Source of the DNA: Perkinsus chesapeaki ATCC PRA-425
Lineage: Eukaryota; Protista; Perkinsozoa
DNA length: 64,000 nt
NCBI GenBank assembly: GCA_013115145.1
Contig: JAAPAO010000022.1
Coordinates: forward strand, 67,444-131,443
Direction: 5' to 3'
The notes under the pieces were generated by a model that had not been told where the DNA came from, made no database searches, and worked only from the letters and a program-made list of their open reading frames with translations. Of this stretch, positions 1 to 58,394 are shown piece after piece; the stretch's first letter is position 1, and each line of letters begins with the position of its first letter. Both the position numbers and the translations under genes were made by a program.

Positions 1-950
1 CGATGCTGCCAAATTTTTCTTCAAGAAAATCAACAAGCAGCAGGCTATGAACCTTGCCAGAACTAGATTTTGGTATCCGAACTCAGGGCTTTAGTCTTCG
101 ACAGTCGGAATTATAAAAGGGAGTCTAAGGATACTACTCAAGAGTCTCGAGGGATCCGGTTGATGATATAGTGCTCACTGATTTCGCTTCTTGATGATGG
201 CTGCTTTGGGACTAACCCGCGAGCCCTACATGCTCAACAACTGCAAGTCTGCGACAGCATTACTCTTGGTAGCAGTCTGTAACTGTAACTTTCAAGAATC
301 CTTTTCGCGCTCAAGGCCACCGATTCGGCGAGTAGGCAAATCATTTTTCGCGGATAGGGACATCAATTTCATGAAGAAGAAGGACTCCTTCTTCTAGGAG
401 TACAAATCCACGGACAAGGACAACAATTTCGGGTTGTACTTTCAAGTATACAACTACAATGAATTTTTACACCAACTACTATCGTATCAATTACTGACGA
501 CTGCACTTAAAGAAAGCTTCTCTTTACGAAGAATAGTTCGCTTAGCTAAATTCCTTGTTCAGCCAAAGTGAAACAAGCGTTCTGTTTGGCAGTGCCAAAC
601 TGGTATTCCTGTATCATGCTAGGTATTGCTATTTTTTTGCGGAAGGACACGAGTTAGTAACTCATGGACCGTGAGTTTGGAATCCAAACTTTGGATCACA
701 ATTAGCCCAATAACCGAGGATCTCAAGGCTAATTAGGGTACTGGATCTTTCGGACTTCTCGAATCGTGGAGGTGAAGGCAGAGAACCCTTCTGCCGTTTT
801 GACGGTTGACCATCGCTCGCCTCTCTCCGACCAGGCCTTTGTCGAATTATTCACGAACCTTCGTAAGATCTATGCAATCAAGGTCCGTGAACTTGAAGTT
901 GCTTCGAAGTTTGGTGAAGTTACTCCTAGGGATTCAGCCAAACACAGGGT
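1..950 (+). pseudogene. Degenerate coding-like segment with in-frame stops and frameshifts; member of a locally repeated family
   Basis: Frame 2 reads as protein interrupted by several stops. The peptide CNCNFQESFSRSRPPIRRVGKS (about 265-330) recurs at about 3700-3760 as CNYTFEYISRLRPPIWRVGKS. DKDNNFGLY (about 415-440) recurs at about 4345-4372 as DKDINVGLY. Confidence 0.35.
676..695. repeat. Inverted triplication TTTGGA-a-TCCAAA-c-TTTGGA
   Basis: Read directly; exact 6-1-6-1-6 pattern. Confidence 0.95.
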
Positions 951-1054
951 TTAACGAAGAACGTCAGGATGACGCCCGTCGGACGAGTAAATCCGGTATA
1001 GTCACTATACCAAAATCACTGTACTGTAGTGAGAACTCACAATATGATGACATA

Positions 1055-1078
1055 GCCGTTACTAACGGCCCGTTAGCC
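1055..1078. repeat. Inverted triplication CCGTTA-c-TAACGG-c-CCGTTA; inverted homologue of 4430-4453
   Basis: Read directly. Its reverse complement matches 4430-4453 at 21/24 positions. Confidence 0.95.
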
Positions 1079-1425
1079 ACGAATATTGGCACACTGGCGG
1101 CCCGTGTGTGGGATCTCCACGTTTTGAAAGCGCCGGGACCAATATAATACGAATCGGTTGTTGTTTGCGGCTCCCAGAGTAGTTCCACTGGATGAATGAG
1201 TGAATGGCTATCTGATCGCCCGGTACCCCGATCGGAGAACCAGACTGGTTCTTCTTAGTCGTCGATTACTCCGGAATAAATGTTTATGGAAGAAAGAGAA
1301 TAATAAGTACTTACAAAAGAACATTCTATAATAATACTAGCTTCAAGCTAAGATATGGGAGTCCCATGATCGAACAGAGATTGTGTGGGACACAGTGGTT
1401 GGGTGATAGAGTGATCAAATCAGTG

Positions 1426-1445
1426 GTGTACCGTACACGGTGTAC
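1426..1445. repeat. Inverted triplication GTGTAC-c-GTACAC-g-GTGTAC
   Basis: Read directly; exact 6-1-6-1-6 pattern. Confidence 0.95.
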
Positions 1446-1551
1446 GCACGGGTGGTGCAACTAGTTGAGTTTGTAACCCAACGCTATCTCATGACAATGC
1501 CAAAAATAAAAGATGAGAAATAAGAACATGAATGACATCTAATCATTACTT

Positions 1552-2667
1552 TTAACCCTCGCTCTTCGCATAAGGAGCTAGTGTTACTGTTCTTCGACCT
1601 TCCCTAATCTCCCGAAATGAAGAAAAGTAGGTTGTGAAAAATGGGCGACCAAGTGTTATGTAGGGTAAGTTGTAGTGTCGTAGTACAAGGTGACACCAAG
1701 TGCCACCACAGTTCTCCGTATACTGGCTAGGAGGGATGTATATAGTTGTATGACTGGTGCGATCACCGAGGGCGAATGCCAGCGTAGGAAAGTACTCATA
1801 TCCCCTCTCTTCGATGAACCATGCACTTCCCTTCGTTACAACGTGAACGTCCAGGCCCGAATCCTGTTTGACAATCTCGGTAATCTTGTTCAATACAAAC
1901 TCGAAGTAGGGCTTGGGTAAAAAAACCGAATATGCACCTGTATCATAAATCACCATACCATCGGGTACTCGTTGCATGAAAGGTCGGCCCTTGGAACTCA
2001 CCAAGGCAAGTGAGAGGAGTGCTGTATTGAAGAACCCGGATGATTTCATTCTAAGAACTATTTTGGGGAAGGCGGTTGGACACTGCTCCTCCCTTAACGA
2101 GCCAAGTATAACCACGCCGGTGAAGTTTTTAAGATCGCTAGGAGCACATACCGATACCGTTTTGTCGGATATAAGATTCTTCAGGAACAGCTGAATCATA
2201 ACGGTCTCATCATATCTATCCATGCGGTATGCAATCCCCAAGTAGTTCATAGGCTTCTCAGTCGGGATTGTCGGACTTGGAGACCATCCTACAATAAGTC
2301 GGAACTTCATCTCGAGCTTATGACCGGCGAGTTCTATAACACCATAATGATAAACAGTCGTGATTGCACTGCCGTCATCGAAATTTATCATGAGCTGTTC
2401 CTCACTGTAGGGGTGGCACTCGTTTATACAAGTATAGCAAGTCTTAGGGGGACATATACCATAGGTCTTCTCATACCAATCTTTATATATAACATGAGTT
2501 CCTATGAGGCCTGAGTCCAAATATAAGTCTAATGGCTGACCATCGAAGGCTATCCCGGTCACTCTATTGCCGCTGAAAGGTAAAGATATCTGACTGCGTA
2601 CCAAATACACCATACTGCTCATGCTTGCCAAATAAATGGCAGTAACCATTAGACTGTAATGGAACAT
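1552..2667 (-). CDS. Secreted pepsin-family (A1) aspartyl protease, intronless
   Basis: 371-aa ORF with a hydrophobic N-terminus, two catalytic motifs (YLDSG and IYDTG), a C-terminal TLGRPFF motif and Cys pairs typical of A1 proteases. Confidence 0.9.
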   Translation of the reverse strand: MFHYSLMVTAIYLASMSSMVYLVRSQISLPFSGNRVTGIAFDGQPLDLYLDSGLIGTHVIYKDWYEKTYGICPPKTCYTCINECHPYSEEQLMINFDDGSAITTVYHYGVIELAGHKLEMKFRLIVGWSPSPTIPTEKPMNYLGIAYRMDRYDETVMIQLFLKNLISDKTVSVCAPSDLKNFTGVVILGSLREEQCPTAFPKIVLRMKSSGFFNTALLSLALVSSKGRPFMQRVPDGMVIYDTGAYSVFLPKPYFEFVLNKITEIVKQDSGLDVHVVTKGSAWFIEERGYEYFPTLAFALGDRTSHTTIYIPPSQYTENCGGTWCHLVLRHYNLPYITLGRPFFTTYFSSFREIREGRRTVTLAPYAKSEG

Positions 2668-3689
2668 CGATTATCAGAGATTTGAAATGATAACACGCTG
2701 TGTATTTACACTATTATTGATAATAAGAAATAAGCGAATGAACTATATTTGATAAATTATTGAATATAACTCATACCCGTATTCCTTAGACCGCCTAAGG
2801 TTTGGACCTCCACGCCGTGGAGCGCACGGTGACCGCGCGTTTTCTAAGCGATGTACTCGAGGTAGCGCCATCATTGTCTATATATCTTAGCCTGTCTACT
2901 GTCCTTTGGCCGTCAATATGACCTGTATAGTTCATATAGTCCTGTATAGCATGAGTCCGACTGCACTCACTGCAGTCATCGCTTCATAGTGCATCGGTAT
3001 TAGCTACGAGTGCGCGATACCCAAGGGCCGCTCCCTCCGTTCAATGGAGTCCGTACGCGAAGGTACTCCTTCTCAACCCATCGAGCGTACCTTCCCAGTA
3101 ACCTTACTAGCGGAGGGGGACGGGAGGGAGGTCCGTGGTTTCCTGCGGGCCACTCGTAACACCGCGCCGACGGGCCCATCGCGCCGAATCGGCGCCGCTG
3201 ATCGGTACCTCTCAATATGGTTGTACGAGAAGGGAGGGGTGGGCGGTAAACGCAAGGCTTGCGTCGCAAGGGCAACCTTGCACAGCGAGTGCTCCACGCT
3301 CCTTCCCTAGTTGGTCGGCTCCTGCAGTGGCCCGTTGGGAACACGTTTGACGGCCAAATAGAAGCCAAACTTTGACCTCTATTTGACCCATCCGGCGTAC
3401 CTTGGTTGCTTCGGGACTCGCTGGGTTCACGCTCCTCCTGGTCAGAACACGCTAATTTGGATGAAATCCATTCAATGAATCACCGAGGGCCAAAGCGAGC
3501 CTACACAGTTGATAGAAACCCCATCCACAGACCAACAAACCGCGAGCACGGATGGTATGGTATTACTTGACAGCGACTCATTTTGGAGTGCAGCGAGCCA
3601 AATCACAGTTACTCGTCTCAGACAAGTCGTCTGGCATAACCAGGCCCTTAATATAATTAAGTTGATTGTACTATCTGGATCGTCGCACC

Positions 3690-3800
3690 GCTCTGCCAGC
3701 CTGTAACTATACCTTTGAGTATATCTCGCGCTTACGACCACCAATCTGGCGAGTAGGAAAATCACTTCTGCGAATAGGGAAATCAATTCAGCGCAGGGTG
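3690..3800 (+). repeat. Diverged copy of the 265-370 segment (degenerate gene-family fragment)
   Basis: cgcgcttacgaccaccaatctggcgagtaggaaaatca versus cgcgctcaaggccaccgattcggcgagtaggcaaatca. Confidence 0.7.
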
Positions 3801-4269
3801 GCCGGTGGGAAGAGAAATAGCAAGTCCTTTCTTCCTCGTATTTTTCATTTCGAAAAATACGAAAATTAGTAAAATCATCGGAATTTTTGCTCAAGTAGGG
3901 TAGAAGTCGTAAATTATGTGCATCATTGAGGTGGAGCATACTACCAAGTCGATATAAGACAATAAAAGCGAAAATTCATGCCGCATGATGCCTCATGCAT
4001 CTCAGCAGACGAGAAAGGAGCGGGTTCGATCGCTGGTGGGGTCATATAAAAGCTCTATATTTGTTCCTTATCAACCTCATGGATACTAGATCCGTGGCGC
4101 CGCCACGGTGGCGGGCGTTATGAACGTATCGCGCTACTTGTAAGAGCCTTCCTACACGCTCTTGTTTTCGGAGTTGCTATTCTTTCTATTTTTCCGAGGA
4201 AAAATAGGCATTCTTTCTTTGAAAAATAGAAATTCTTTCTGAATGTAAAACCGGCCACTCTGATTCAGC

Positions 4270-4385
4270 GGTAGGGGCCGATAGAGAAATCAATTCCGCG
4301 AATAAGGCCACCAATTTCATGTAGGAGGATTGGAATTCCAGGGACAAGGACATCAACGTCGGGTTGTACTCTCAACTACTGTAGT
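4270..4385 (+). repeat. Third diverged fragment of the same family (matches about 340-450)
   Basis: ggacaaggacatcaacgtcgggttgtact versus ggacaaggacaacaatttcgggttgtact. Confidence 0.6.
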
Positions 4386-4395
4386 TAATTAATGT

Positions 4396-4888
4396 AATTG
4401 TGTAACACAATTTATGCGCATCGGAGTTGGGCTAATGGGCCATTAGTAATGGCCCAACTTGGGCCGAGATGCGGTCGCTGGGTGTTTACTTCATACAGTA
4501 TATGTGTTCCTCCGGGGGAGACTGTATTACACAGTCTGTGTAGACAGCATAACGTGCGCTGCATTATGCAGGCTGCATACGGTATGCAACATACTGTGTG
4601 CTGCTAACATACTGAGGCAAGCACACTTGCTGAGGGTACTCCCTCAATTTGAGGGCCTCAACTTGTATAATAAAGAATTTTTGTATACACCACTCGTCAG
4701 CAGCTGTATTGGTATTTTGCGTCCTACCAGTCACATAAGAATTATCCTTGCTTGCAACAATCATTCGAGAACGTTAACTACAGATCTAGCGGACCTAGCA
4801 TTGTTACGATATGATACTGTAACAATGCTGGCATAATCTCGAGGGGATTGGCTCCCTCGGGATAATCCCGACTCGGGATTCCCGAGGG
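4396..4888. repeat. Palindrome-dense non-coding segment: four 6-1-6-1-6 triplications plus other inverted repeats
   Basis: AATTGTGT-a-ACACAATT at 4396; TAATGG chain at 4433-4452; CTGCAT chain at 4559-4578; CCTCAA chain at 4642-4661; 11-bp stem at 4797-4829; TCCCGA chain at 4866-4885. Confidence 0.9.
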
Positions 4889-5177
4889 CATTGGCACCAG
4901 GAGAGACAATGCACAGATTTCCAACCAATTCTGGTCAATAGGGTTTTAATTCAAAGTATAATAGTAACACATCACATTTTAATGGCTGACAGCTCTGAAA
5001 ACGTGTAAACATAGTGGAGGGGATAATGAGCTGTACATCATCTTCAATGAAATGATTAGTCAAGTAATCTGATAACCGTATAATCCATCTTAGTGGTTCC
5101 CTGCATATTGCACGCGAAGACAGAAAGCGGCAAATAATGCGTAACGTCATTTATAGTAGCTAAAGAGGGTGATGATA
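4781..5177 (+). repeat. Segmental duplication copy 1 (non-coding), paralogous to 6925-7242
   Basis: Shared blocks cagatctagcggaccta, ggcattggc, atgcacagattt, catattgcacgcgaagacagaaagcggcaaat and agggtgatgata occur in the same order. Confidence 0.9.
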
Positions 5178-6111: not shown

Positions 6112-6846
6112 CTATACGAAACATCCTTCTGTGCACTCCTGCGACTTACTCTTCTCAAAAGTCTCGCCGTTTCCTACGCTCAACTTGAGGACAAGCACAG
6201 AGTCTCCAGTAGACCTCACTACTTCGTGGGCAAAGCAGTCGAAGAGTCCAGGCAGGCTTGCGACAGTTACGGACATTGCGTCTCCTCCATCTGCTGTCTG
6301 CACCAGCAATTCACTCCCTGCAATTCTCGGCCAGATCTGATCAACGTCCTTTCGGATAGTCTGCCAGGAAAAGCCGAGCGTGTTGTAATGAGGGCTGATA
6401 AAAACCTCGTTCCCATATCTAACTTGATACCGATAACGCATCGGCCTCGGGCTATTCTTGGATTCTTCCTTGCCACTCGGTTCCGGACGATCGACCGAAT
6501 GCTTCGGACGCGCGTCAACAGCCACGGTGGGAGTAAGTTTTGCAGCTTTTGGCTGGACGGTCATATTCAGCATCAAATAAAGGCGAGTGCGAGGCCCCTT
6601 GTGTTCCTTTCCAAACATATCGAGCAACAAGTCTACAGTGGACTCTATGTCTTCGCCATCCACATAGCACGTCCGTCCCTTTTCATCATGGCACACGATA
6701 GAGTAGTCGAGGCATTCAAGTTCGGGCCATCTGGTCTCTATTCGACTGACTAGATTGCCAAGTTGCTGGGAGGGAACCCTAACCAGGTAGAGATCAGTAC
6801 CGTATGTGACACGGCAAAGATAGGTAGTGCCTTTGAAAGGCTCCAT
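6112..6846 (-). CDS. Hypothetical protein with two internally duplicated PB1/ubiquitin-like-fold candidate domains (main exon; further 3' exons probable to about 5800)
   Basis: ATG ORF of 244 aa, clearly paralogous to 7574-8536 (RVTY...RWPEL...VCHDE.GR; GLFDCFA.EVVR..GD). The acidic CHDEKG stretch resembles the PB1 OPCA motif (inference). Confidence 0.6.
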   Translation of the reverse strand: MEPFKGTTYLCRVTYGTDLYLVRVPSQQLGNLVSRIETRWPELECLDYSIVCHDEKGRTCYVDGEDIESTVDLLLDMFGKEHKGPRTRLYLMLNMTVQPKAAKLTPTVAVDARPKHSVDRPEPSGKEESKNSPRPMRYRYQVRYGNEVFISPHYNTLGFSWQTIRKDVDQIWPRIAGSELLVQTADGGDAMSVTVASLPGLFDCFAHEVVRSTGDSVLVLKLSVGNGETFEKSKSQECTEGCFV

Positions 6847-6924: not shown

Positions 6925-7242
6925 CAGATCTAGCGGACCTAAGGTAGCTACGATATCCCAAAGGCATTGGCAGCACAAGGGACGATGCACAGATTTCGAA
7001 CCAATTGTGGCCAATATTCATTTTTTTTTTCAAAGTATAATAGTAATAACCACCTTTTGATGGCTGACAACTCTGAAAACATTTAATCATAGTGATAATG
7101 AGATTTAAGTCATCTTTAATGAAATGATTATTTAGGTAATCTGATAAGCGCATAACCCATCTAATCATGCATATTGCACGCGAAGACAGAAAGCGGCAAA
7201 TGATGCATGACGCCACTTATAGTAATCAAAAGGGTGATGATA
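6925..7242 (+). repeat. Segmental duplication copy 2, directly upstream of the 6846 start codon
   Basis: Colinear similarity to 4781-5177. Confidence 0.9.
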
Positions 7243-7573: not shown

Positions 7574-8536
7574 TCATTTCGTTCCAGGGGATGCCGAAGA
7601 GGAGCGGTAGGGCCCGGCGATACCTGAGGACTCAGATCCTTGATTATGTTGTTCCACTGGCATAACCCATGAAGATGTTCCCAGACCGGCGCTGCTGGTC
7701 GACAAGACGTCCTCGGGATGGTAGGAAGCCAAGTCATGCTCTGAGCTCTCGTCATCAGTATTCGAGTCCTTGGCAGTTTGGCATTCTGACTCTTCCTCGC
7801 CCGAAGTAGACTTGGGCCAGCCACAGCACGAGCAGCACTTACCGCCGCCCTTCTCCGGGTCTACAGTCAGTTCGAGAATGAGGATGTAGTCACCATTAGG
7901 CCTCACAACCTCTTTGGCGAAACAGTCGAAGAGCCCATCAACACTCGAGCTCTTTGTGGTCAATTCGTTCCTACTTGAAGAAATCTTCGCACTCGCATCG
8001 CGGCACCGCAGCGGAAAGTTGGTTTGAGAGAGCTCGGGCCAAACATCTTCGATGTCCTTGCGTATATCGTCCATAGAAAAGTCTATCTCATTGTGAATAG
8101 CACTGATGAAACACTCATCACCGCGGAAGATTTGGTATTGGTAGCGAGGCGGCCTTGAGATCTTTGGACCATCATCAGCTATAGTCGGGCTAGCGCACCT
8201 CTCTCTCACTGATCCACCGCCAGGAGTTACCGAACTGAGACTTGTTGACCTCGGTACTACGGTCAAATCGAGTACGAGATAAGTGGAACCGTTATACCCC
8301 TTGCACTCTTTAGCCGCGGTAGCGAATATCGGGTTGATATTTCCTTCACTCACAGAGCATGCCCGTCCTTCTTCGTCGTGGCAAACGAGGCGGTGGTCGA
8401 TTCCGCGGAGTTCGGGCCATCGGTCTTTCAACCGAACCGTCATCCACCCGAAGTTGAGCCTCTGGCCGGTGTCATCTATGTAAAATTCCGACTTATATGT
8501 CACGCGGTAACAATAGTGGAAGTCAGCAGAAGCCAT
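7574..8536 (-). CDS. Tandem paralogue of 6112-6846; two PB1-like candidate domains and a Ser/acidic tail
   Basis: 320-aa ATG ORF that aligns with its neighbour, including the downstream GTSSWV motif. Confidence 0.65.
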   Translation of the reverse strand: MASADFHYCYRVTYKSEFYIDDTGQRLNFGWMTVRLKDRWPELRGIDHRLVCHDEEGRACSVSEGNINPIFATAAKECKGYNGSTYLVLDLTVVPRSTSLSSVTPGGGSVRERCASPTIADDGPKISRPPRYQYQIFRGDECFISAIHNEIDFSMDDIRKDIEDVWPELSQTNFPLRCRDASAKISSSRNELTTKSSSVDGLFDCFAKEVVRPNGDYILILELTVDPEKGGGKCCSCCGWPKSTSGEEESECQTAKDSNTDDESSEHDLASYHPEDVLSTSSAGLGTSSWVMPVEQHNQGSESSGIAGPYRSSSASPGTK

Positions 8537-8791
8537 TTATCCACAATCATGCAGAATGCGTTCTTGAAGGCTGCCACGGCCTCGATTCTATTGTCACGGG
8601 CATGCGTGCTAACTTCCGCACGCGTGCGCTAAGACGAGCAACGGGTGGAGAAACACTGATGGCGTCAGGGTGCTAGGGCTTTTCATCCCGAGATTATCTC
8701 GGGTTCCTTGGCGAGATATGTACTATGACGCGACTCAATTGAGTGCAAGAAAGCTTCATCGAGCCTGCCTCATCATCATGCGGTTCTTAAA

Positions 8792-12974: not shown

Positions 12975-15900
12975 TCAGTGAATGTCCAGGGCTTCCCAAG
13001 GGGCAACATCCTCGACGCCCTGAACGAACTCGCTGGTGAGGTGCCGCCAGATAGCCAGTCGCCAAAGCTGCCATGGTATCTCCTCTAGCTCTGGCGGAAT
13101 CTGTATGTTGTAAGCCTGGAAAAAGGTGGCATAAACATAAAGTAGAAGGGTATATACATGACGCTATTCATTACGGCACATATACAGTGGAGACACAAGG
13201 CTATTAGTGAAGCAAGTGGAGGCTTAATGAGCAAGAGGAATCACACAAGGCAGAACTGCTGTATTGAGAGTGGGCGTTGTAGAAGAAGACGACTAAAGAT
13301 TGAACACACCTCTGTCATCTCAGCTGCCAGCTGTCGTCCAGTGCATTGGCCTCCACCTTTTACTTGGCTTGCTAACTTCTCAAGGGAAATGAAGCTGACA
13401 GAAGTACCCTGTGAAACCTGAAAAGCAAAGGTAGAAGTAGGATGTGGCTACACCGAAGGGTACCTCTTGAGACCATACCGCAATAACATCGGCAATAAGT
13501 CGAATGAAACCATAGTCTCCAATGAAGGTCTTGATACCTTCGAGCGCCAAGGCTTCATCCTGGCATTAGGGAAGGAGGAATTCGAGAAGACGGGACTGCC
13601 AATCACCTCGTCAATGATTCCGTTAGCATCAGTGTCCAGGAAGCTGAATGCTTGAGCAGCAGCTGCTCGTGTGGCTGGTGTGGTAGCTTCCAGATAGTCC
13701 TGAGAATGCTGCCTGGACGTGGCTCGAGCCAGCATACGTACCTCCAAGCCCTGCAGGTCCATACCTTTACCAGGGCCCAACTCCTCTTTCTCTTCCTCCT
13801 TGCCATGTTTGGTCGTGTGCTTAGTCTCCAGGAAGGACCCCCCACTGCCAGGTGAGCTGGTTCCCATTACAGCTTCGAAGCCATGGAATAGCTGCATGAA
13901 CCACAACCTTCGAGACTGGCTGTCATACGCCAGAAGCCTCAGGAGACCGAGCTCATTCGCTGACACCGTGCCTGAGAGGCTCACGCCCACTGGACGCCAG
14001 TCGACGTCCCCGAGCTCACCGTCGCCATCGTGATCGAAGTATTCCTCAAGCAAAGTTCGAGTACCCACAGGGAGAGCGGCCAGCAATGTCGGGACTTCAG
14101 CCGAGTATCGAGATGCCCTTGCCAAAGCCCTCGGAGTTAGCAGTAGAGGAGCATGCCGGAGGGATGGAGGAGCTGCTGCCTCAAGACGAGACCATTGCTG
14201 CCATTCTTCGAGAGAGATCGTCCAGCTGCCATCTAGATCGATAAGGGAGAGCAACTAAAACGTTAGTACTCAGCGCAAGGCAGCGCCAGCTACCTCAAAT
14301 CCCCAACGGTTGGTCGTCCACTCGGTGCCAGCCAGTTCGGTAGGAGTGAGGACACCATCATTGTCGGTATCCAAGGTCCAGAATCTCGCCCGCATAGTAA
14401 CAGCACTGAATGCTGCCGCCAGCATCGGTATAGATAGCCTAGGGCGGATACTAGGAGGGCGATAGCTACATGTAGGTCACCTATCGGTAGACCATAGGCG
14501 CCCCAGTAATATCAAAACATCTATTGGAATACCATCCTTGCCAATATCGAGAAGCGCGTCGAATGCCTGGACCAGAATCACCACAGAACAGACGCGATTC
14601 GCACCTCCTTGGAGAAGGCACCGTCTGGAGCATCAACATCTATACCATAACGAACGAACTCCACGGTATCAATGACACCGTCGCTGTTCTTGTCCATGGA
14701 CCTCAGCGAGCTTTCCACCGACACTCTAGAGCTATCCATCAGTGGCGCCAGGCTTTGCCGTGCAACAGCTACGCGCAGTAACGCAGTCGCGACCTCCTCT
14801 ACAGCAAAAACACTAGGCCTCCTGTCGACAGAGCAGGTAGAGTACTGTTATCAGAGACGAGATAGTCTTTAATAGCATCACGGGTGGCTTTGGGCAAATC
14901 CCTCAGCACTTCTCTGTACGCAGCCATCGGATCGCCAGAGCCACTGTATCGTTCAGCCAACCTGCAACAGTAATCGCATTATCGATAATACTGAGATACT
15001 GTTCAGATACTTCGATGCAAAAAGCGATGCCGCCGGTGGCATGATGTCATCCTCCGAGTGAGCTAGCATTTGCCATTCCCCTCGACCGAGGACGTCTGAT
15101 GGAATGAAGGACATCAACTTGGAGTAGGCTGCCTGAGACGGAAACGGCTGAACAAACCACACAGGAGAAGTGGCTTACACAAACCGAGGAAACAGTGGAG
15201 GTAGAGTTCCTTGAAGGACATCCAAGATCACTCCGGTCTATGCGACCGTCCTTGTTATTGTCCAGCTCAGAGAATCTCATTTCTAGCTCGGCGGATCGTA
15301 ATAGACGCAGCAAGCGGTTGGTCTCTCTAAAGGCACCCCTCGGCCATATATTCGACCAACGGAGCATCGCCTACCGGCCGTCCTTGAACGCCCGATAGAG
15401 CCGGTCAACCAGACGCCAAGATGGTTGGCCTTCATGGCTCTTATGCAGCAGGCTGAGGAGCTACAAAGGGAATATGGTGATTAGAAGAGGAATCACAGAG
15501 ACAGATCACTTCGGAGGTGAAAACACCTCGCGTGCCGAGGCCTCGACCGAACTCCAGCCAAGTAGTCTCGGTCAGCCTCCCCTTAGGGAATGCCAGCTGA
15601 GCCTAGGACGCGAATTGGTAAAGCTGGCTTAGGTTGCCCTACATGAATCGGCAAGACGACTTCAGGATACTCGAGGGGCTCCTCTGATCGAGGAGCACCA
15701 ACTTCGAAGAAGGACCCCTACCAGTAACACTAACGGCAGACAGCATATTCTAGCATACGGTAACAGAGTGCCACAATGATCTCATCCAAGAGCCCTGCTT
15801 CATTATCGATGTGTCAGCTTCAAAGGCCTTCTGCAGTAGATCACCGTAAGTGGTGTCGAATGTAGGCGTGCCATGATCCAGCCCGATGAGTAGCCGAGCC

Positions 15901-50598: not shown

Positions 50599-50952
50599 AC
50601 CCCCTCACAAAATAATATGGCCTCTACACTTTTGAGCATAAAATACTAACGAGAAAGAGTTAGGACTTGATATTTTGTGAGAACAACTTTTTTACGATGC
50701 TGATATAAACTGTCATGAGACTTTATATTGGTTGAAGGGGGTCGTTGCAGCATCATTCGAGTTGCTTTTCGCATGGCCCAGTGGTTGGTCACGACTACAT
50801 CGTTAAAAATAAGATTTTCTAATTCCCAAGGAGATGATTCTTAGTCGATGCCCCTCTCAATTAGATCCCTTGATGGATAGAATCTTGATGATGAATCCAA
50901 ACGTGCAGTAGCAGATTGTGATACTCTACGAATTCCAAAAAGACCTTGGAGT

Positions 50953-50995
50953 CTCCGCAGATCATATCTCCAAGTTGGAGATATGATCTGCGGAG
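50953..50995. repeat. Perfect 43-bp palindrome (21-bp arms, single G spacer)
   Basis: ctccgcagatcatatctccaa-g-ttggagatatgatctgcggag, checked base by base. Confidence 0.97.
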
Positions 50996-52670: not shown

Positions 52671-52882
52671 CGATTACCACGTAGCTGTTTACATGTACTT
52701 TTCTCGTCGTTATAACAAGCATTTCTGAGAGCATATCTTTGCTTTGTTTAGCTTCATTACTGCCCTCGTTGTGTTGCCGATATCTCGCTGATGAAAACTG
52801 TAAAACATGAAACGCTTCGCTCCGCTGTAGTGATCTCTCGCTCGCCCGCGTATTTGGCGTCTCCTCCTTGCCCGATTCTTGG

Positions 52883-55800
52883 ATGTCTTCTCCCCCTTTC
52901 CCTTCGAGTTCATCATCACCTCCGTCGACCCCATCAACCCCATCACCGGCCGCTCCACGAGCCATCTCTCGTGGAAGTGTCGCCCAGGACGTCGAAGCTG
53001 AGCTCCGTATTATATGTGTTGAATCAAGAAAGAAGTATAGCCAGATTAAGGAACATTCAGAGCGAGTGATCGCGAAACTGATAGCCAGCAATGGCAATGT
53101 CCCAGTGGAGGAGGTCCTCGCTGTTGTTATAGTGGCCTCAGAGACTCACAATCCTAAGCTAGTGCTGCCTTGCCTTGGGTGCGTTCAAAGGCTTATAATG
53201 GGCCAACTTGTGAACACCAGCAAATTGCTGGGAACGGTTGTGACGTATCTGCACGATAGAGCCAACGATAGCGATCCAACGGTACAAGTTAAAGCTCTGC
53301 AAACCATATTGCTTCTATTAACTCCATCCTTTGCACCATTATTAACCGGCTCTGAGATATTCATGGAGCAGCTCTTATCAGCCTGTGTTATCCTATTGGG
53401 TAGCGATTCCGGCTTAGTTCGACACACTGCCGTAGCCTGTCTTCGCCAAGTCGCTGATTTTTTGATTGATGAAGCCGGCAAGGCTTACCGTAACCTAACT
53501 GCGGACGCCCTTGAGAACTTGGGGACGGGTCGCGATGACAGTGGCAGTAGTCGCAAAGGTCCAAGTGGGTCGTTAATGGTTGAGGCAATGCCTGTGCCAG
53601 ACAGACTTCCGAGTGGTAATACTGCCTTGCGAGAACATACAGAAGTATCTAGTAGAGTGTTGTTGTTGTGGTATATCTCAGGTCCACTTCGATTACTATT
53701 CCTTTTTGTCCACGACCTGTGCCTTATTTCGATGGGTCGAGCATCACGTGGTGAATGGCTTGGTGAACTGGCCATATCAAGAGCATTAGCACTAGAGCTT
53801 ATAGAGAGTACGTAGAGGGGGTTAAAAGAATAACAAAAACAGCAAGAAGACGACGCATGATGATTAATATACTATAATACTTGATTATTTTATAACGATA
53901 TACTGATGGAGCACGTATAGCGGGCCAGTATCTGCCGCCGATTGGGAACAAAGCTCATTACACTATTCAACTACTCGACAACGTTCCATTTATTACACTA
54001 TTAAGACGCTTGGAGAGCTTGATGTTTTAAAAAGGTGCGTTGGCCGCTCAAGCTGATGTGTTCGCGTCCCTTCCCGATTTCACGGAACTAGTCCGTCAAG
54101 TAGTCGTGCCCACAGTGGAAAGCACTATTGCTGTTTGCCAATATGATTTCAAAGTAATAACAATTGAAAGAAGAACTACCGCGCGCCACGAAAAGGTTGC
54201 TTTGAACAGGTTCTAATTCGTGCACTAAGAATCGTCTACCGCCTTTGTTCATATCCTCCTCTGTGTGCCAAACTGCGCCGCGAAATCTGCGGCGAATCCT
54301 CAGCTCCTGGCGAGCAGCAGCAGCCGCATTCGGGCCCTCATGGTCCAGTCCGTGGCCTGGTGCCTCTCATGTTGCGCCAGCTCTTACTGCGGCATGACCG
54401 TCCACTGTGGGCTAGGTCGGCCGTGTTGGAAACATTCAGGAAGATCCTGCAGTCTGGCAACGATGCTGCAGATGGTTTCCTGAACACCCTCTTCCTTGGC
54501 TCCTCCAGTAGCGTCTTTACCACTTCCCCGTTGAACGATGATATCCTCGAAAGCGATGACAATAGCAGCCCATCGGCATCATCGACGACGAGGGCAACAC
54601 AAGTGGTAACTGACCCGAAGTCGAATAGGTTCGTGGAGCTTGTCAACAGTCTAAGCCATGTACTTCATCATCTCTGGTTTGCATCGGTACCGACTCAGTC
54701 CGCTGAAGACATATCTGAAACGGTTGTCTACGATGAGCTGGATACCAACAATGCCACTTCAGGCAGCGATCTCCTCACTTTAGGAGTCTCGAGAATCTTT
54801 GCCGGCGAAGGTCGAGTGTCCTTACTAGACTGTCTAGCCGATTCAGATGCGCCCAGTTTCGTGAACCCCTCGTTTGGTGCTGCCATGGCAGCCGACACTA
54901 TACTGTTGTTAGTGGATCACATCAACACCTGTGCGATGCTCGCTTGCTCCTGGGCGCCATTGCTGTCCTCCCTGAGCCTTCTCTTGAGCGTCCGCCTTCC
55001 CAAGGCTAATGTACAGTCCAACGGCAGCGACATGCTTACTGATGATGAGGAAGCATTCGATGTGTTCCTTCAAGGCGTTCTCACTGCACTGGAGCGCCTG
55101 CTCCTAGGCTGCGCCAAATTCCCTCAGCTCAGTAGTGGCCGAGATAGCTGTCTTGAGGCACTGGCGAAGGAATCCTTGCCGCGTCGAGGCGCGCAGGAAC
55201 TTGATTCCCACACAGCAGCCTGCGCGAAAGGGTTTCTGAATATCTGCCATCGCAGCGGTGAGAAACTGTCCGTGCCTGGATGGTCCCTGGCGCTGCGGAC
55301 GTTCGAGACCCTCTATCTTCGATTCATCAGCCCAGAGCAGCAGGCCGTGTCAGCCAACTCCGACAGCGCCTTGGAATGCCAGATGCTCGCTGTTTCCATG
55401 GACTCCTTGTTTTCTACTACCCCCGAGTCCGATGGCTCCTTCATCGACATGGTCAATGCTTTGGTCCATCGAGACACTTGTTGGTCCATTCAAAGACTGG
55501 CCATGGCCCTGTCATCGGCTGATTCAAGAAGACTTGGTCTGGTTCTTGATAGCATCGTCACACCTAATCTTAAGGGCAGTACCCACCCCGAGGAAGCTGC
55601 CATCTGTATGGGCAAAGTGCTCACTGCTCATATATGCCGACCTGGCTGCTCGACCTCGAGCCTGATAGAGCCCCTGAAGGCCTTTGCTACATCTGCACCT
55701 GAGACCGTGGTGTCCATCCTTAAGGATGTCATGGTCCACTCGCCGGTCTCCTCTAAGCTGGATGAAGCTGGCTGGGTCTCTCTCAGCGAGCTGGTCCGTG

Positions 55801-58394
55801 ACCTCTGCGATGTTCCCACTGTCGTCGTTGCCAACCAAGCCAACGCTTCCGCAGGAAAACGGTCGAGCCGTCTGATGTCCAATCAACTTCACCTATCTGT
55901 ATATTCCCTCCTGGAGGTCCTCGTTGTTGAGTGCATCGATGTCCTTCCTAATGCCAGCGTGTCTTTGATAGTAGACGGTCTCCAACGCCTATGCACCAAC
56001 AGCGTTGTTAACACCTCCTTGAAGGCTCTAGGTCTACTGTGGAACGTGTCTGATGCCCTAATGAGCCGGATGTCCGGTAGGGTCAGCACTGCAGCCGACC
56101 AAAGCCGGCGACACTACAGCACGGGCAGCAGTGATGGTGGCACGCCCACTGTTGAGCCCATTGTGTGTAACCCTGAGGAAAGCGCCCATTTATGGTTCGA
56201 CCTGCTCACCAAGTTCAAGAGCGCCTCCTTGGACCCCCGGCCGCCGGTCAGGCACTGTGCCATCAGGACCATGGTATCGATGCTTAATGCGGCCTGCGGA
56301 TGCCCACAGGTGGATTCGGCCGCAGCTGTTGGTGTGATGTGTGATACATTGTCAGAAGTAGTCGAGGCCAGTATGGCAGCCTCCTCTGTGGACACACCCC
56401 CACTTGAGGACTCCCCTCGCTACACCCGAGGTTCATCGTCGGAAGGCCTCATTGTCCATCATTCGAGAGACTCCCTCCAAAAGCAATGGAACGAGACATG
56501 CGTCCTGGCCCTGGAAGGGTCTGTCTCGATTGCCACCAGATATCACCCATATATGACCGAGGACCAGTTTGACCGCCCAACTCAGGCCATTCTGGACTTC
56601 ATTCGCCCTCGGTTGGTAGGCCGTGACGGTGAGGTCCATGGCGCATGCGCCAATGCTCTGGTGGAGCTCCTCCGTCTTGGTGCTGTCGAGAAGGATGAGA
56701 AGCTTTGGTCCGAAGGCTGGCAGCTGGTTGCCTATGTTGCCGATTCTCTGGTAGAGGAGCCCATCTTGACTGAAGAAGCCAGCGTACTGCTGCCAATAAG
56801 CCTTGCCGAGCTGGTCAAGGATCCGCAGTGCTTGGAGGCGTTCCGCGCCGATGATGTCATTGTTCTAGCCTTGTTGGTGATGGCCACTGTAACGAGGCCA
56901 TCGATCTTCCTGCAGTCCGCCCTGCCTTTCAAGGACATATGGGTACCCACTACCCTCACCAACAGGCCTAGCAAACCGGTTAGGGCCGGAAGTAGCGTCA
57001 GCCAAGGCCTATGCGAGGTAACCTCTCGTGGACGGTGTGCAGAGCTCCTCTGGGGCAAGTCCAGCGATTCGTCCTCATCGATGACAACGCGCTACCGCCG
57101 CTTGCCTGAGGTGGTAAAGAGCCCTCTGGTGGAGGCACGTGAGAGAGGTGACGGTCATGATGAATGTCACCAGCCAGCCGTAGCCGATGATATTGTATTC
57201 TCGAGAACGGTCCAGCGATTGCCCCACAAGTTCATGGAGCTTTGGTCTGTGATAGATCTCTTGGCAACGAGTCCGGTCCCTGAAGATTCTCTCGAGGTGT
57301 TGGTGCGGCTGTTGTGCAACGGGCTACTCGACGTCAACTACTGCCTTCGGGACTCCCTCACAGCCGCCCTAGCCGTTCGAGCTGGCACCACTTGCGAGCT
57401 CATCGCGCAGAAGCTGCCTGCCTCGGCCGAGGTGAAGCCATCAATCTTGGAGATGATGGCATCGACAGCGATGGACTTCATGAGGACCTATTACGCTGGT
57501 GGGACTGGCGGTGGTCAATCTTGGAAGGCCAGCGGGTTCTGGCAGCTCAGCTGCGAGATAATCTCAACTGGATTGGACCAGCTGCGTTCCATGGTCATTG
57601 CCGAGCCCACTGAAGGTTTCTGGTCTGACTGCGTCTCCGAGCTGTGCAAGAGCTTACCGGCCGTTTTGAAGATCCATTTCCGCTACTACCAACCTCCTCA
57701 GCAACGACCAGTGTCAAGCCCGGCCGCCGGGACCGCCAACGACGCTGTCGACTGGGCAACCACGTCAGCAGTGGCCATCTTAATAGCTCTTTGCCGCTCC
57801 AACTTTGCCGATCCCACAAAGGTCGTTGAATTAACCAGTACGTTGTGTGACACACGAGGCAGCGGCGACCTCGGCAGATGCGCTCTTCGAGTCCTCTTTG
57901 CTGTGGCCAGCCCACGTGGCATCCTTTGGTCAACCGAAGATATGAAAAGCAGCTCGATGATGGTGGCAGAGCGATGGGTGGGCCATCGGTACTCTGGAGC
58001 AGTCCATCAGCCATCAAGTCCTGTTCCGAGTTCTGTGGGGCGTGACTCTGGTATGGACATCAGCCCCCAGCTTCGCAAACTTGGGACCTCCGAGCTGTGT
58101 AGGAGGGTCTGTTGCACTTTATCTCAATATGCTGAAGATGACAAGACAACATCATCGACCGAGAAGCCTATGCCGCGTCATCGGACCGAACAAGTTCTCT
58201 TCGTCCTTGGCCGATTGTGCGAGTCCACCGATCAACAGCTGCTCCTAGCGACCTTGCCGGCGCTGTCTAGGATTGTGGCGAGTGCTCGTGATGATGATGT
58301 TCGGCGAGCAGCGTCAGATGTTTTACTGTGTCTGGCCGACACCCTTGGCAGCAGAGCTGCTTACAAAGATCTTGTCGGTACAGAGTTTGTGTAA
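52883..58394 (+). CDS. MON2: MON2 homologue (Arf-GEF-like endosome/Golgi trafficking scaffold)
   Basis: N-terminal DCB pattern (ELRIICVESRKK..IKE; KLVLPCLGCVQRL; VQVKALQTILLLL), plus LKALGLLWNVSD, DPRPPVRHCAIRT and HHSRDSLQKQWNET, all typical of MON2. The terminal exon is about 4 kb. Confidence 0.9.

What the first reader, a model, noticed from the sequence alone, without database searches (positions are those of the whole stretch)
584..4888. Seven exact 6-1-6-1-6 inverted triplications, each from a different hexamer: a candidate mutational mechanism
Seen: exact a-N-a'-N-a 20-mers at 676 (TTTGGA), 1056 (CCGTTA), 1426 (GTGTAC), 4433 (TAATGG), 4559 (CTGCAT), 4642 (CCTCAA) and 4866 (TCCCGA). There are also many 6-8 bp palindromes with a single-base spacer (584, 651, 995, 1236, 1338, 1355, 2808, 4100, 4396, 4451, 4574). 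Chance per site for the triplication is about 4^-12, so far fewer than one is expected in 5 kb. All lie outside the intact protease ORF. The geometry is shared but the sequence is not, which points to a process rather than a binding motif. Inference: repeated snap-back templated synthesis at breaks (Pol-theta-like end joining), or hairpin-opening footprints as left by hAT-type transposon excision.
Basis: partly seen in the sequence, partly recalled or inferred. Interest (0 to 1): 0.8.

Follow-up and report, generated by a model that had tools for sequence, protein, structure and literature searches.

The report
Uniform jumping-gene excision scars
The small mirror-image triplets are real and are most likely repair scars left each time a hAT-type jumping gene cut itself out of this shellfish parasite's non-coding DNA; the chemistry is known, but scars this uniform and dense are unusual and make past jumps countable.

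Summary
All seven 6-1-6-1-6 sites are exact, and there are two more at 3251 and 4094. Positions 1-5000 hold 35 palindromes with a one-base centre (shuffles give 1.3) and no even palindromes.

The true unit is a 22-mer: N1-7 + reverse complement of N1-8 + N2-8. It is specific to an 8-base core. There are 5 perfect sites and 11 with one failed pair or none, against 0 for a 7-base core and 1 for a 9-base core.

This is the geometry expected of hAT excision: an 8-bp target duplication, a flank hairpin offset by one base, and long hairpin tails that anneal.

Support inside the window:
- A 469-bp element at 3794-4262 has CAG-type inverted termini and a perfect 8-bp duplication.
- Two paralogous empty sites differ from their scars by exactly 14 nt.
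- An asymmetric footprint with a 21-nt arm lies at 50946-50995.

Short-read contigs from two studies reproduce the sequence. Five other contigs of the assembly (Perkinsus chesapeaki) show the same scar, with 27 perfect sites in 94 kb.

The Pol-theta snap-back reading is not supported. The hAT reading is. No transposase was verified here. Earlier notes of this scan reported the same scar on other DNA of this genome.

The parts
675..696 (.). 22-nt scar, perfect; inferred target 8-mer GTTTGGAT
   Evidence: 0 of 14 pair constraints fail
1055..1076 (.). 22-nt scar, perfect; 8-mer GCCGTTAG
   Evidence: 0 fails
1425..1446 (.). 22-nt scar; 8-mer CGTGTACG
   Evidence: 1 fail (first base)
3181..3202 (.). 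22-nt scar; 8-mer GCGCCGAT
   Evidence: 1 fail
3250..3271 (.). 22-nt scar; 8-mer ACGCAAGC
   Evidence: 1 fail (last base)
4093..4114 (.). 22-nt scar, perfect, nested inside the 469-bp element; 8-mer CGTGGCGG
4432..4453 (.). 22-nt scar, perfect; 8-mer CTAATGGC; a further odd palindrome follows at 4451-4465
4521..4542 (.). 22-nt scar; 8-mer ACTGTGTA
   Evidence: 1 fail
4558..4595 (.). three overlapping scars starting at 4558, 4567 and 4574, read as repeated hits at one spot
   Evidence: 1, 3 and 2 fails
4641..4662 (.). 22-nt scar; 8-mer CCCTCAAA
   Evidence: 1 fail
4865..4886 (.). 22-nt scar, perfect; 8-mer ATCCCGAG; last unit of the four-arm accordion 4857-4886
3612..3633 (.). degenerate scar whose paralog just upstream of the window start has a single 8-mer (TTCGACTG), exactly 14 nt shorter
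   Evidence: 2 fails; alignment; gap count
3647..3668 (.). degenerate scar whose paralog has the single 8-mer CTTAATTG, exactly 14 nt shorter
   Evidence: 3 fails
585..606 (.). degenerate scar (8-1-8 palindrome plus a partial third arm)
   Evidence: 3 fails
1354..1375 (.). degenerate scar
   Evidence: 3 fails
2808..2829 (.). degenerate scar
   Evidence: 2 fails
3459..3480 (.). degenerate scar, weak
   Evidence: 3 fails
3980..4001 (.). degenerate scar inside the element
   Evidence: 3 fails
4397..4418 (.). degenerate scar (8-1-8 palindrome plus a partial third arm)
   Evidence: 3 fails
2959..2975 (.). 17-nt classical short footprint: 7 nt + ctc + 7 nt, 8-mer GACTGCAG
   Evidence: perfect for 1+2 P-nucleotides; 0.13 expected for this class
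3794..4262 (.). 469-bp non-autonomous element, termini CAGGGTGGCCGG / CAGAGTGGCCGG (11 of 12)
   Evidence: about 4x word depth over 3907-4240
3786..3793 (.). left copy of the 8-bp target duplication ATTCAGCG
4263..4270 (.). right copy of the 8-bp target duplication ATTCAGCG
4797..4829 (.). 16-1-16 odd palindrome (14 of 16 paired) centred on G4813, the first base of the 68 nt that paralog 6925-7016 lacks
50946..50995 (.). asymmetric footprint: 7 nt of the 8-mer CTTGGAGA + 1 P-nucleotide + 21-nt inverted tail + centre + right copy
   Evidence: 0 of 8 mismatches
1552..2649 (-). intact peptidase A1 gene, free of scars; it separates the two scar-rich intergenic stretches

Best explanation
These are excision footprints of hAT-type cut-and-paste transposons in non-coding DNA of Perkinsus chesapeaki. 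An element inserts and duplicates an 8-bp target, N1-8. On excision the transposase nicks one base into each flank and seals each flank as a hairpin: N1-7 + c8..c1 on the left and c8..c2 + N1-8 on the right, where c is the complement. The host opens the hairpins well away from the tip. The resulting 3' tails carry inverted copies of the same 8-mer, so they are complementary at their ends. Whenever the two openings together span at least 8 nt, annealing or end-to-end joining gives the same product: N1-7 + reverse complement of N1-8 + N2-8. That product is 22 nt, 14 nt more than the empty site, and reads as two overlapping 7-1-7 palindromes. Unequal opening gives the other forms seen: 1+2 nt at 2959, 1+22 nt at 50946, and one-sided palindromes. 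Repeated insertion and excision at one spot builds the accordions. Shown here: the geometry, its statistics, the +14-nt derived state, one resident element, and replication on other contigs. Inferred: the identity of the transposase, where the hairpins are opened, and the annealing step.
For: The geometry is specific to L=8. In 1-5000 there are 5 perfect sites, 11 with one fail or none and 21 with three fails or fewer, against 0, 0.04 and 0.28 in shuffles; L=7 gives 0 and L=9 gives 1. Five other contigs (94.5 kb) give 27, 47 and 73 sites at 0, up to 1 and up to 2 fails for L=8, against 1, 2 and 21 for L=7 and 0, 0 and 1 for L=9. Only odd palindromes are enriched, 35 against 1.3, and even ones number 0. 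Both arms reach 7 in most sites, as the model requires. P-nucleotide totals are bimodal: a total of 8 dominates and totals of 4-7 are absent. Two paralogous empty sites carry one 8-mer where the scars sit, each exactly 14 nt shorter (the gap total of 29 = 14+14+1). A third paralog comparison shows the extra DNA starting with a centre base followed by an inverted copy of the left flank. The resident element at 3794-4262 has CAG termini and a perfect 8-bp duplication. The footprint at 50946-50995 fits with 0 of 8 mismatches. Literature: hAT makes 8-bp duplications (PMC10368747, PMC4423477) and forms the hairpin on the flank (PMC6900584). Cleavage is at the flanking 5' nucleotide (PMC1978519). 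Ac/Ds footprints are palindromes centred on the complement of the base next to the element, with arms up to 20 nt in yeast and microhomology in 85-100% of cases (PMC5873905).
Against: No hAT transposase was identified by me; none lies in the window or the six fetched loci (and the gene lists), and its presence in the genome rests on unchecked earlier notes. No site was seen in both filled and scar states. The empty-site evidence comes from diverged paralogs, not alleles. Only one resident element was found against about 58 good scars in 158 kb. The inferred 8-mers show only a weak Y2Y3/R6R7 bias, not a clear nTnnnnAn pattern. Several solitary 8-1-8 palindromes and the 68-nt segment at 4813-4880 are not fully explained.
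Confidence: 0.85

Rival explanations
1. Snap-back templated synthesis at random double-strand breaks (Pol-theta-type end joining): a resected 3' end folds back on itself, is extended, and repeats, leaving inverted and direct copies of the flank.
For: The extra DNA is templated from the immediate flanks. The 68-nt segment at 4813-4880 also contains a diverged direct copy of the right flank, which looks like filler synthesis. Microhomology-driven joining is part of the best model too.
Against: This process has no reason to fix the unit at 8 with one-base centres. L=7, 9 and 10 are essentially empty in 5 kb here and in 94 kb elsewhere. Even palindromes are absent, and intermediate P-totals are absent.
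Confidence: 0.04
2. Footprints of another hairpin-forming element or nuclease with an 8-bp stagger: a MULE, an undescribed superfamily, or a domesticated transposase that cuts without moving an element.
For: MULEs also form flank hairpins and can make 8-10-bp duplications (PMC5499845). The transposase was not identified here. Scars greatly outnumber resident elements.
Against: The Muta1 flank hairpin is 43+43 nt with no offset, which would give even palindromes, and none are seen. The resident element has short CAG-type termini, the hAT type, and not long GAG-type MULE termini (PMC4423477 Table 1). A 9-base core is almost absent.
Confidence: 0.08
3. Selected functional hairpins (protein-binding or RNA structure elements), or a sequencing or assembly artefact.
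For: The sites cluster in gene-flanking DNA, and all can form cruciforms or hairpins.
Against: Every site has a different sequence. Sites decay continuously from 0 to 3 failed pairs. Paralogs lack them. Contigs from two independent studies reproduce them exactly. ARAGORN finds no tRNA or tmRNA genes in the window; Rfam was not searched.
Confidence: 0.02

Closest known systems
Ac/Ds (hAT) excision footprints in plants, budding yeast and Candida
   Same: They are palindromic P-nucleotide insertions centred on the complement of the base next to the element, between two copies of an 8-bp duplication that each lose one base. Microhomology is used after hairpin opening, and arms reach 20 nt in yeast (PMC5873905).
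   Different: Experimental footprints there are heterogeneous and mostly short: arms of at most 3 nt in Candida, and 28 footprint types among 128 events. Here one product dominates, the full inverted 8-mer (22 nt), totals of 4-7 are absent, and the scars are fixed in the genome at up to about 5 per kb.
Hermes transposase mechanism (hAT) and V(D)J coding-end hairpins
   Same: The non-transferred strand is nicked first and a hairpin forms on the flanking DNA. The host then opens the hairpin and joins the ends (PMC6900584). The duplication is 8 bp (PMC10368747).
   Different: No enzyme was studied here. The opening position far from the tip is inferred from the products only.
Pol-theta templated insertions (alternative end joining)
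   Same: Short inverted or direct copies of the flanks appear at repaired breaks, and microhomology is used.
   Different: That process has no fixed length, no one-base centre rule and no dependence on a target duplication.
MULE (Muta1) excision
   Same: It forms a flank hairpin and makes 8-10-bp duplications (PMC5499845).
   Different: Its hairpin has no offset, more than 90% of its excisions in yeast are precise, and its termini are long.

Membership tests
hAT excision footprint | Built on an 8-bp target-site duplication | tested here: met
   The scar model is enriched only for L=8. Empty paralogous sites hold one 8-mer and are 14 nt shorter.
hAT excision footprint | Palindrome centred on a single base, the complement of the duplication's terminal base (one-base offset nick) | tested here: met
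   Odd palindromes number 35 against 1.3 expected and even ones 0. The last base of the 22-mer pairs with the first centre in 16 of the 21 listed scars. At 3612 the centre is the complement of the paralog's eighth base.
hAT excision footprint | Resident elements with short CA/YARNG-type inverted termini and 8-bp duplications in the same DNA | tested here: met
   One element at 3794-4262, with termini starting CAGGG and CAGAG and the duplication ATTCAGCG. No others were found in 158 kb.
hAT excision footprint | A hAT transposase (DDE core, hAT dimerisation domain) encoded in the genome | not tested
   None in the window or loci L001-L006 (and gene lists). I had no tool-supplied seed sequence to search with. 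Earlier notes report relics but I did not check them.
hAT excision footprint | The same site seen filled (element plus duplication) and as a scar | tested here: inconclusive
   Logan contigs of four runs show no alternative allele at any scar, but contigs drop rare variants and the runs may all come from the source strain.
hAT excision footprint | Target preference nTnnnnAn | tested here: inconclusive
   Among 29 inferred 8-mers, pyrimidines number 18 and 20 at positions 2 and 3, and purines 17 and 21 at positions 6 and 7 (A at position 7 in 13). The bias is weak and symmetric.
Pol-theta templated insertion | Variable length and position of the templated copy, with no fixed geometry | tested here: not met
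   The geometry is fixed at 7-8-7.
MULE excision footprint | Flank hairpin without offset (even palindromes) and 9-10-bp duplications | tested here: not met
   No even palindromes in the cluster. L=9 gives 1 site and L=10 gives 0. The Muta1 hairpin is 43+43 nt.

The most novel reading that the evidence does not exclude
Perkinsus may open transposase-made hairpins far from the tip, for example because it lacks Artemis-type tip opening. Nearly every hAT excision would then converge on one self-identifying 22-bp product through the complementarity of the two tails. These scars would accumulate in intergenic DNA and probably in introns, attract further insertions that build accordions, and add measurable DNA: 21 candidate scars with up to 3 failed pairs overlap roughly 14% of the non-coding part of 585-4886. 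That would be a countable fossil record of excisions and a minor mode of non-coding DNA growth not described elsewhere.
Probability: 0.45. Interest if true: 0.65.

Novelty: new variant of a known kind. Interest (0 to 1): 0.55.

Why it matters
Excisions of cut-and-paste transposons are normally invisible in genomes, because their footprints are short and heterogeneous. Here each excision appears to leave a 22-bp mark that names its own target 8-mer. Past transposon traffic could therefore be counted, dated by decay and mapped, with no outgroup needed. The uniform product also reports on how this early-branching relative of dinoflagellates and apicomplexans processes DNA hairpins and joins breaks, which has not been studied. 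In practical terms, these scars explain a large share of the short palindromes in Perkinsus non-coding DNA and should not be mistaken for regulatory hairpins.

Tried and rejected
- An exact-product look-up of the 371-aa ORF found nothing, because the recorded gene model starts 6 codons later. This was solved through.
- Pfam gives no hit for the protease itself or for any ORF in the cluster, even at E up to 1. The family assignment rests on paralogs that carry PF00026 and on the DSG and DTG motifs.
- Global MAFFT alignments misplaced the gaps, so a local alignment with the element removed was used.
- My first scan of L002 counted a run of N as perfect scars. This was corrected.
- A TIR plus duplication search with 7-, 8- and 9-bp duplications found only the one element; two 7-bp hits in L002 look like chance.
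- BLAST of the element against all held loci found no other copy.
- Solitary 8-1-8 palindromes were tested for an adjacent copy of the 8-mer, and none was found.
- Four papers (PMC321453, PMC6212770, PMC4105704 and Lazarow 2012) were not available, so the one-base offset is cited through PMC1978519 and PMC5873905.
- No tRNA genes were found in the window.
- I could not search for a hAT transposase in the genome, because no tool supplied a seed sequence.
Full report
OBSERVATION. A scan of the whole window for a-N-a'-N-a with 6-nt arms finds nine, adding 3251 and 4094, and all nine lie in the first 5 kb of 64 kb. In 1-5000, palindromes with a one-base centre and arms of at least 6 number 35, against a mean of 1.3 and a maximum of 5 in 200 dinucleotide-preserving shuffles. 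With arms of at least 7 the count is 26 against 0.36. Even palindromes number 0 against 1.09 expected. The other 59 kb is near expectation. Logan contigs from four runs in two studies reproduce 400-2539 and 2609-5131 with 0-1 differing letters, so the structures are not an artefact of this assembly. Those runs may be the source strain, so they say nothing about polymorphism.

THE REAL UNIT. Earlier notes of this scan, on other pieces of the same genome, proposed a 22-nt scar: N1-7 + reverse complement of N1-8 + N2-8. I tested this as a general model with core length L. In 1-5000, L=8 gives 5 perfect sites, 11 with one failed pair or none, 14 with two or fewer and 21 with three or fewer out of 14 pairs. 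Shuffles give 0, 0.04, 0.14 and 0.28. L=7 gives none up to two fails, and L=9 gives a single site. The 21 sites run from 585 to 4886, and the rest of the window has only three weak three-fail hits. Each site has a different 8-mer.

CONTEXT. The closest relatives of the ORF at 1552-2649(-) are 13 Perkinsus chesapeaki proteins named as peptidase A1, many of them carrying PF00026. The window's own model is 365 aa. It lies on contig JAAPAO010000022.1 of GCA_013115145.1. The scars fill the two intergenic stretches on either side of this gene and avoid the gene itself. No ORF in the cluster matches any Pfam family.

A RESIDENT ELEMENT. Positions 3794-4262 are a 469-bp non-coding element. Its termini are CAGGGTGGCCGG and, on the other end, CAGAGTGGCCGG (11 of 12 matching), and it is flanked by a perfect 8-bp direct repeat, ATTCAGCG. 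A blind search for inverted termini flanked by 7-, 8- or 9-bp repeats finds only this element in the window and in five further loci. Part of it (3907-4240) has about four times the word depth of its neighbours, so similar sequence exists elsewhere in the genome. Two scars, at 3980 and 4093, lie inside it. An 8-bp duplication with termini starting CA is the hAT signature (PMC4423477 Table 1; PMC10368747).

EMPTY SITES. The intergenic DNA is partly duplicated. The stretch from about 190 nt upstream of the window start to position 10 is a paralog of 3470-3700 (confirmed with locus L001). Where copy 2 has the degenerate scars at 3612-3633 and 3647-3668, copy 1 has single 8-mers, TTCGACTG and CTTAATTG. 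The two gaps are each exactly 14 nt, which is the 22 minus 8 the model predicts. A second duplication, 4781-5158 against 6925-7224, shows 68 extra nt in copy A. The extra DNA begins at G4813, which is the centre of a 16-1-16 palindrome (14 of 16 paired) made of the left flank and its inverted copy, and it ends in the accordion at 4857-4886. That segment also holds a diverged direct copy of the right flank, so it needs at least two events plus filler synthesis. I did not fully decompose it.

OTHER PRODUCTS OF THE SAME PROCESS. I scanned the family N1-7 + a + b P-nucleotides + N2-8. A total of 8 dominates, totals of 4-7 are absent, and there are two short classical footprints with a total of 3, for example 2959-2975. 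The 21-1-21 palindrome at 50953-50995, 46 kb away, is preceded by exactly the first seven bases of the 8-mer CTTGGAGA plus the complement of its eighth base, with 0 of 8 mismatches. This is an asymmetric footprint of 1 + 22 P-nucleotides.

REPLICATION. Five other loci on five other contigs of the same assembly (94.5 kb) give 27, 47 and 73 sites at 0, up to 1 and up to 2 fails for L=8. The figures are 1, 2 and 21 for L=7, 0, 0 and 1 for L=9, and 0, 0 and 1 for L=10. Several of these sites lie inside the spans of called genes whose products are much shorter than the span, so they are presumably in introns; I did not verify that. Earlier notes of this scan reached the same reading on other DNA of this genome.

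MECHANISM. The following is established knowledge. hAT transposases cut the non-transferred strand first and form a hairpin on the flank (PMC6900584). [quoted passage not shown] Ac/Ds footprints are palindromes centred on the complement of the base next to the element, with arms up to 20 nt in yeast, and 85-100% show microhomology after hairpin opening (PMC5873905).

The following is inference. The left hairpin reads N1-7, c8, c7..c1 and the right reads c8..c2, N1, N2-8. If the two are opened dL and dR nt from the tip, the tails carry c8..c(9-dL) and, on the other strand, N1..N(dR). For dL+dR = 8 they abut. For larger sums their 3' ends are complementary over dL+dR-8 nt. In every such case the joined product is the same 22-mer. 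This explains both the stereotypy and the absence of totals 4-7 if opening is usually at least 4 nt from the tip. Unequal opening gives the 1+2 and 1+22 forms. Loss of one copy of the 8-mer would give solitary palindromes. Re-insertion into or beside a scar gives the overlapping sets at 4432-4465, 4558-4595 and 4857-4886.

RIVALS. Snap-back synthesis at random breaks has no reason to fix L at 8 or to forbid even palindromes. MULEs form flank hairpins but without an offset (43+43 nt for Muta1) and mostly make 9-10-bp duplications. Functional hairpins are unlikely, because the sequences all differ, they decay, and paralogs lack them.

WEAK POINTS. I did not verify a hAT transposase in this genome. 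No site was seen both filled and scarred. The empty sites are paralogous, not allelic. Scars outnumber resident elements by about 58 to 1 in 158 kb. The inferred 8-mers show only a weak Y2Y3/R6R7 bias. Solitary 8-1-8 palindromes (584, 995, 1236, 4396, 8687) and the 10-1-10 palindrome at 375 have no adjacent 8-mer copy.

NOVELTY. The chemistry and the idea of palindromic hAT footprints are textbook. I found no description, in the searched literature, of a genome in which one full-length product dominates and accumulates at this density, nor any report for Perkinsus. I rate it a new variant of a known kind, of moderate interest.

Noticed in passing
window 1552-2649 (-); proteins P0001-P0014: The scar-free ORF belongs to a peptidase A1 (pepsin-like) family. 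All 13 detectable relatives are from P. chesapeaki itself, several in a tandem array on one 81-kb contig. The window's copy has DSG and DTG motifs but no Pfam hit of its own.
   Followed up: partly
window 305-460, 3726-3793, 4271-4378: Arrays of a 21-bp unit (about GCGAATAGGGAAATCAATTC) occur in two paralogous intergenic copies. The 469-bp element is inserted inside one array. Loose ends in the read data show similar arrays elsewhere in the genome.
   Followed up: partly
window 6112-6846 (-) and 7574-8536 (-); 4781-5158 vs 6925-7224: Two paralogous genes of unknown function with no Pfam hit. About 300 bp on the higher-coordinate side of 6112-6846 (6925-7224) has an 84-91% identical copy at 4781-5158, which provided the internal control.
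   Followed up: partly
window 4682-4744: A segment of about 63 bp has 4-6 times the word depth of its neighbours and sharp loose ends on both sides in all four runs, so it is a short multi-copy repeat of unknown nature.
   Followed up: no
window 373-393: A 21-nt insertion relative to the paralog at 4313/4314 forms a 10-1-10 odd palindrome that is not a simple copy of its flanks.
   Followed up: partly
window 584-600, 995-1011, 1236-1252, 4396-4412, 8687-8703: Solitary odd palindromes with arms of exactly 8 and no neighbouring copy of an 8-mer. Why the arm length is so often 8 is unexplained.
   Followed up: partly
L003 1-10000 (contig JAAPAO010000115.1): A 10-kb stretch with only one small called gene (132 aa at 3203-3601) and no ORF above 138 aa holds most of that locus's 28 scars with two fails or fewer, and no recognisable element.
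   Followed up: partly
window 52868-58394 (+): ORFs with the Mon2/Sec7 DCB domain and the Mon2 C-terminal region, probably exons of one Mon2-like trafficking gene. An EF-hand ORF lies at 13448-14254 (-).
   Followed up: no
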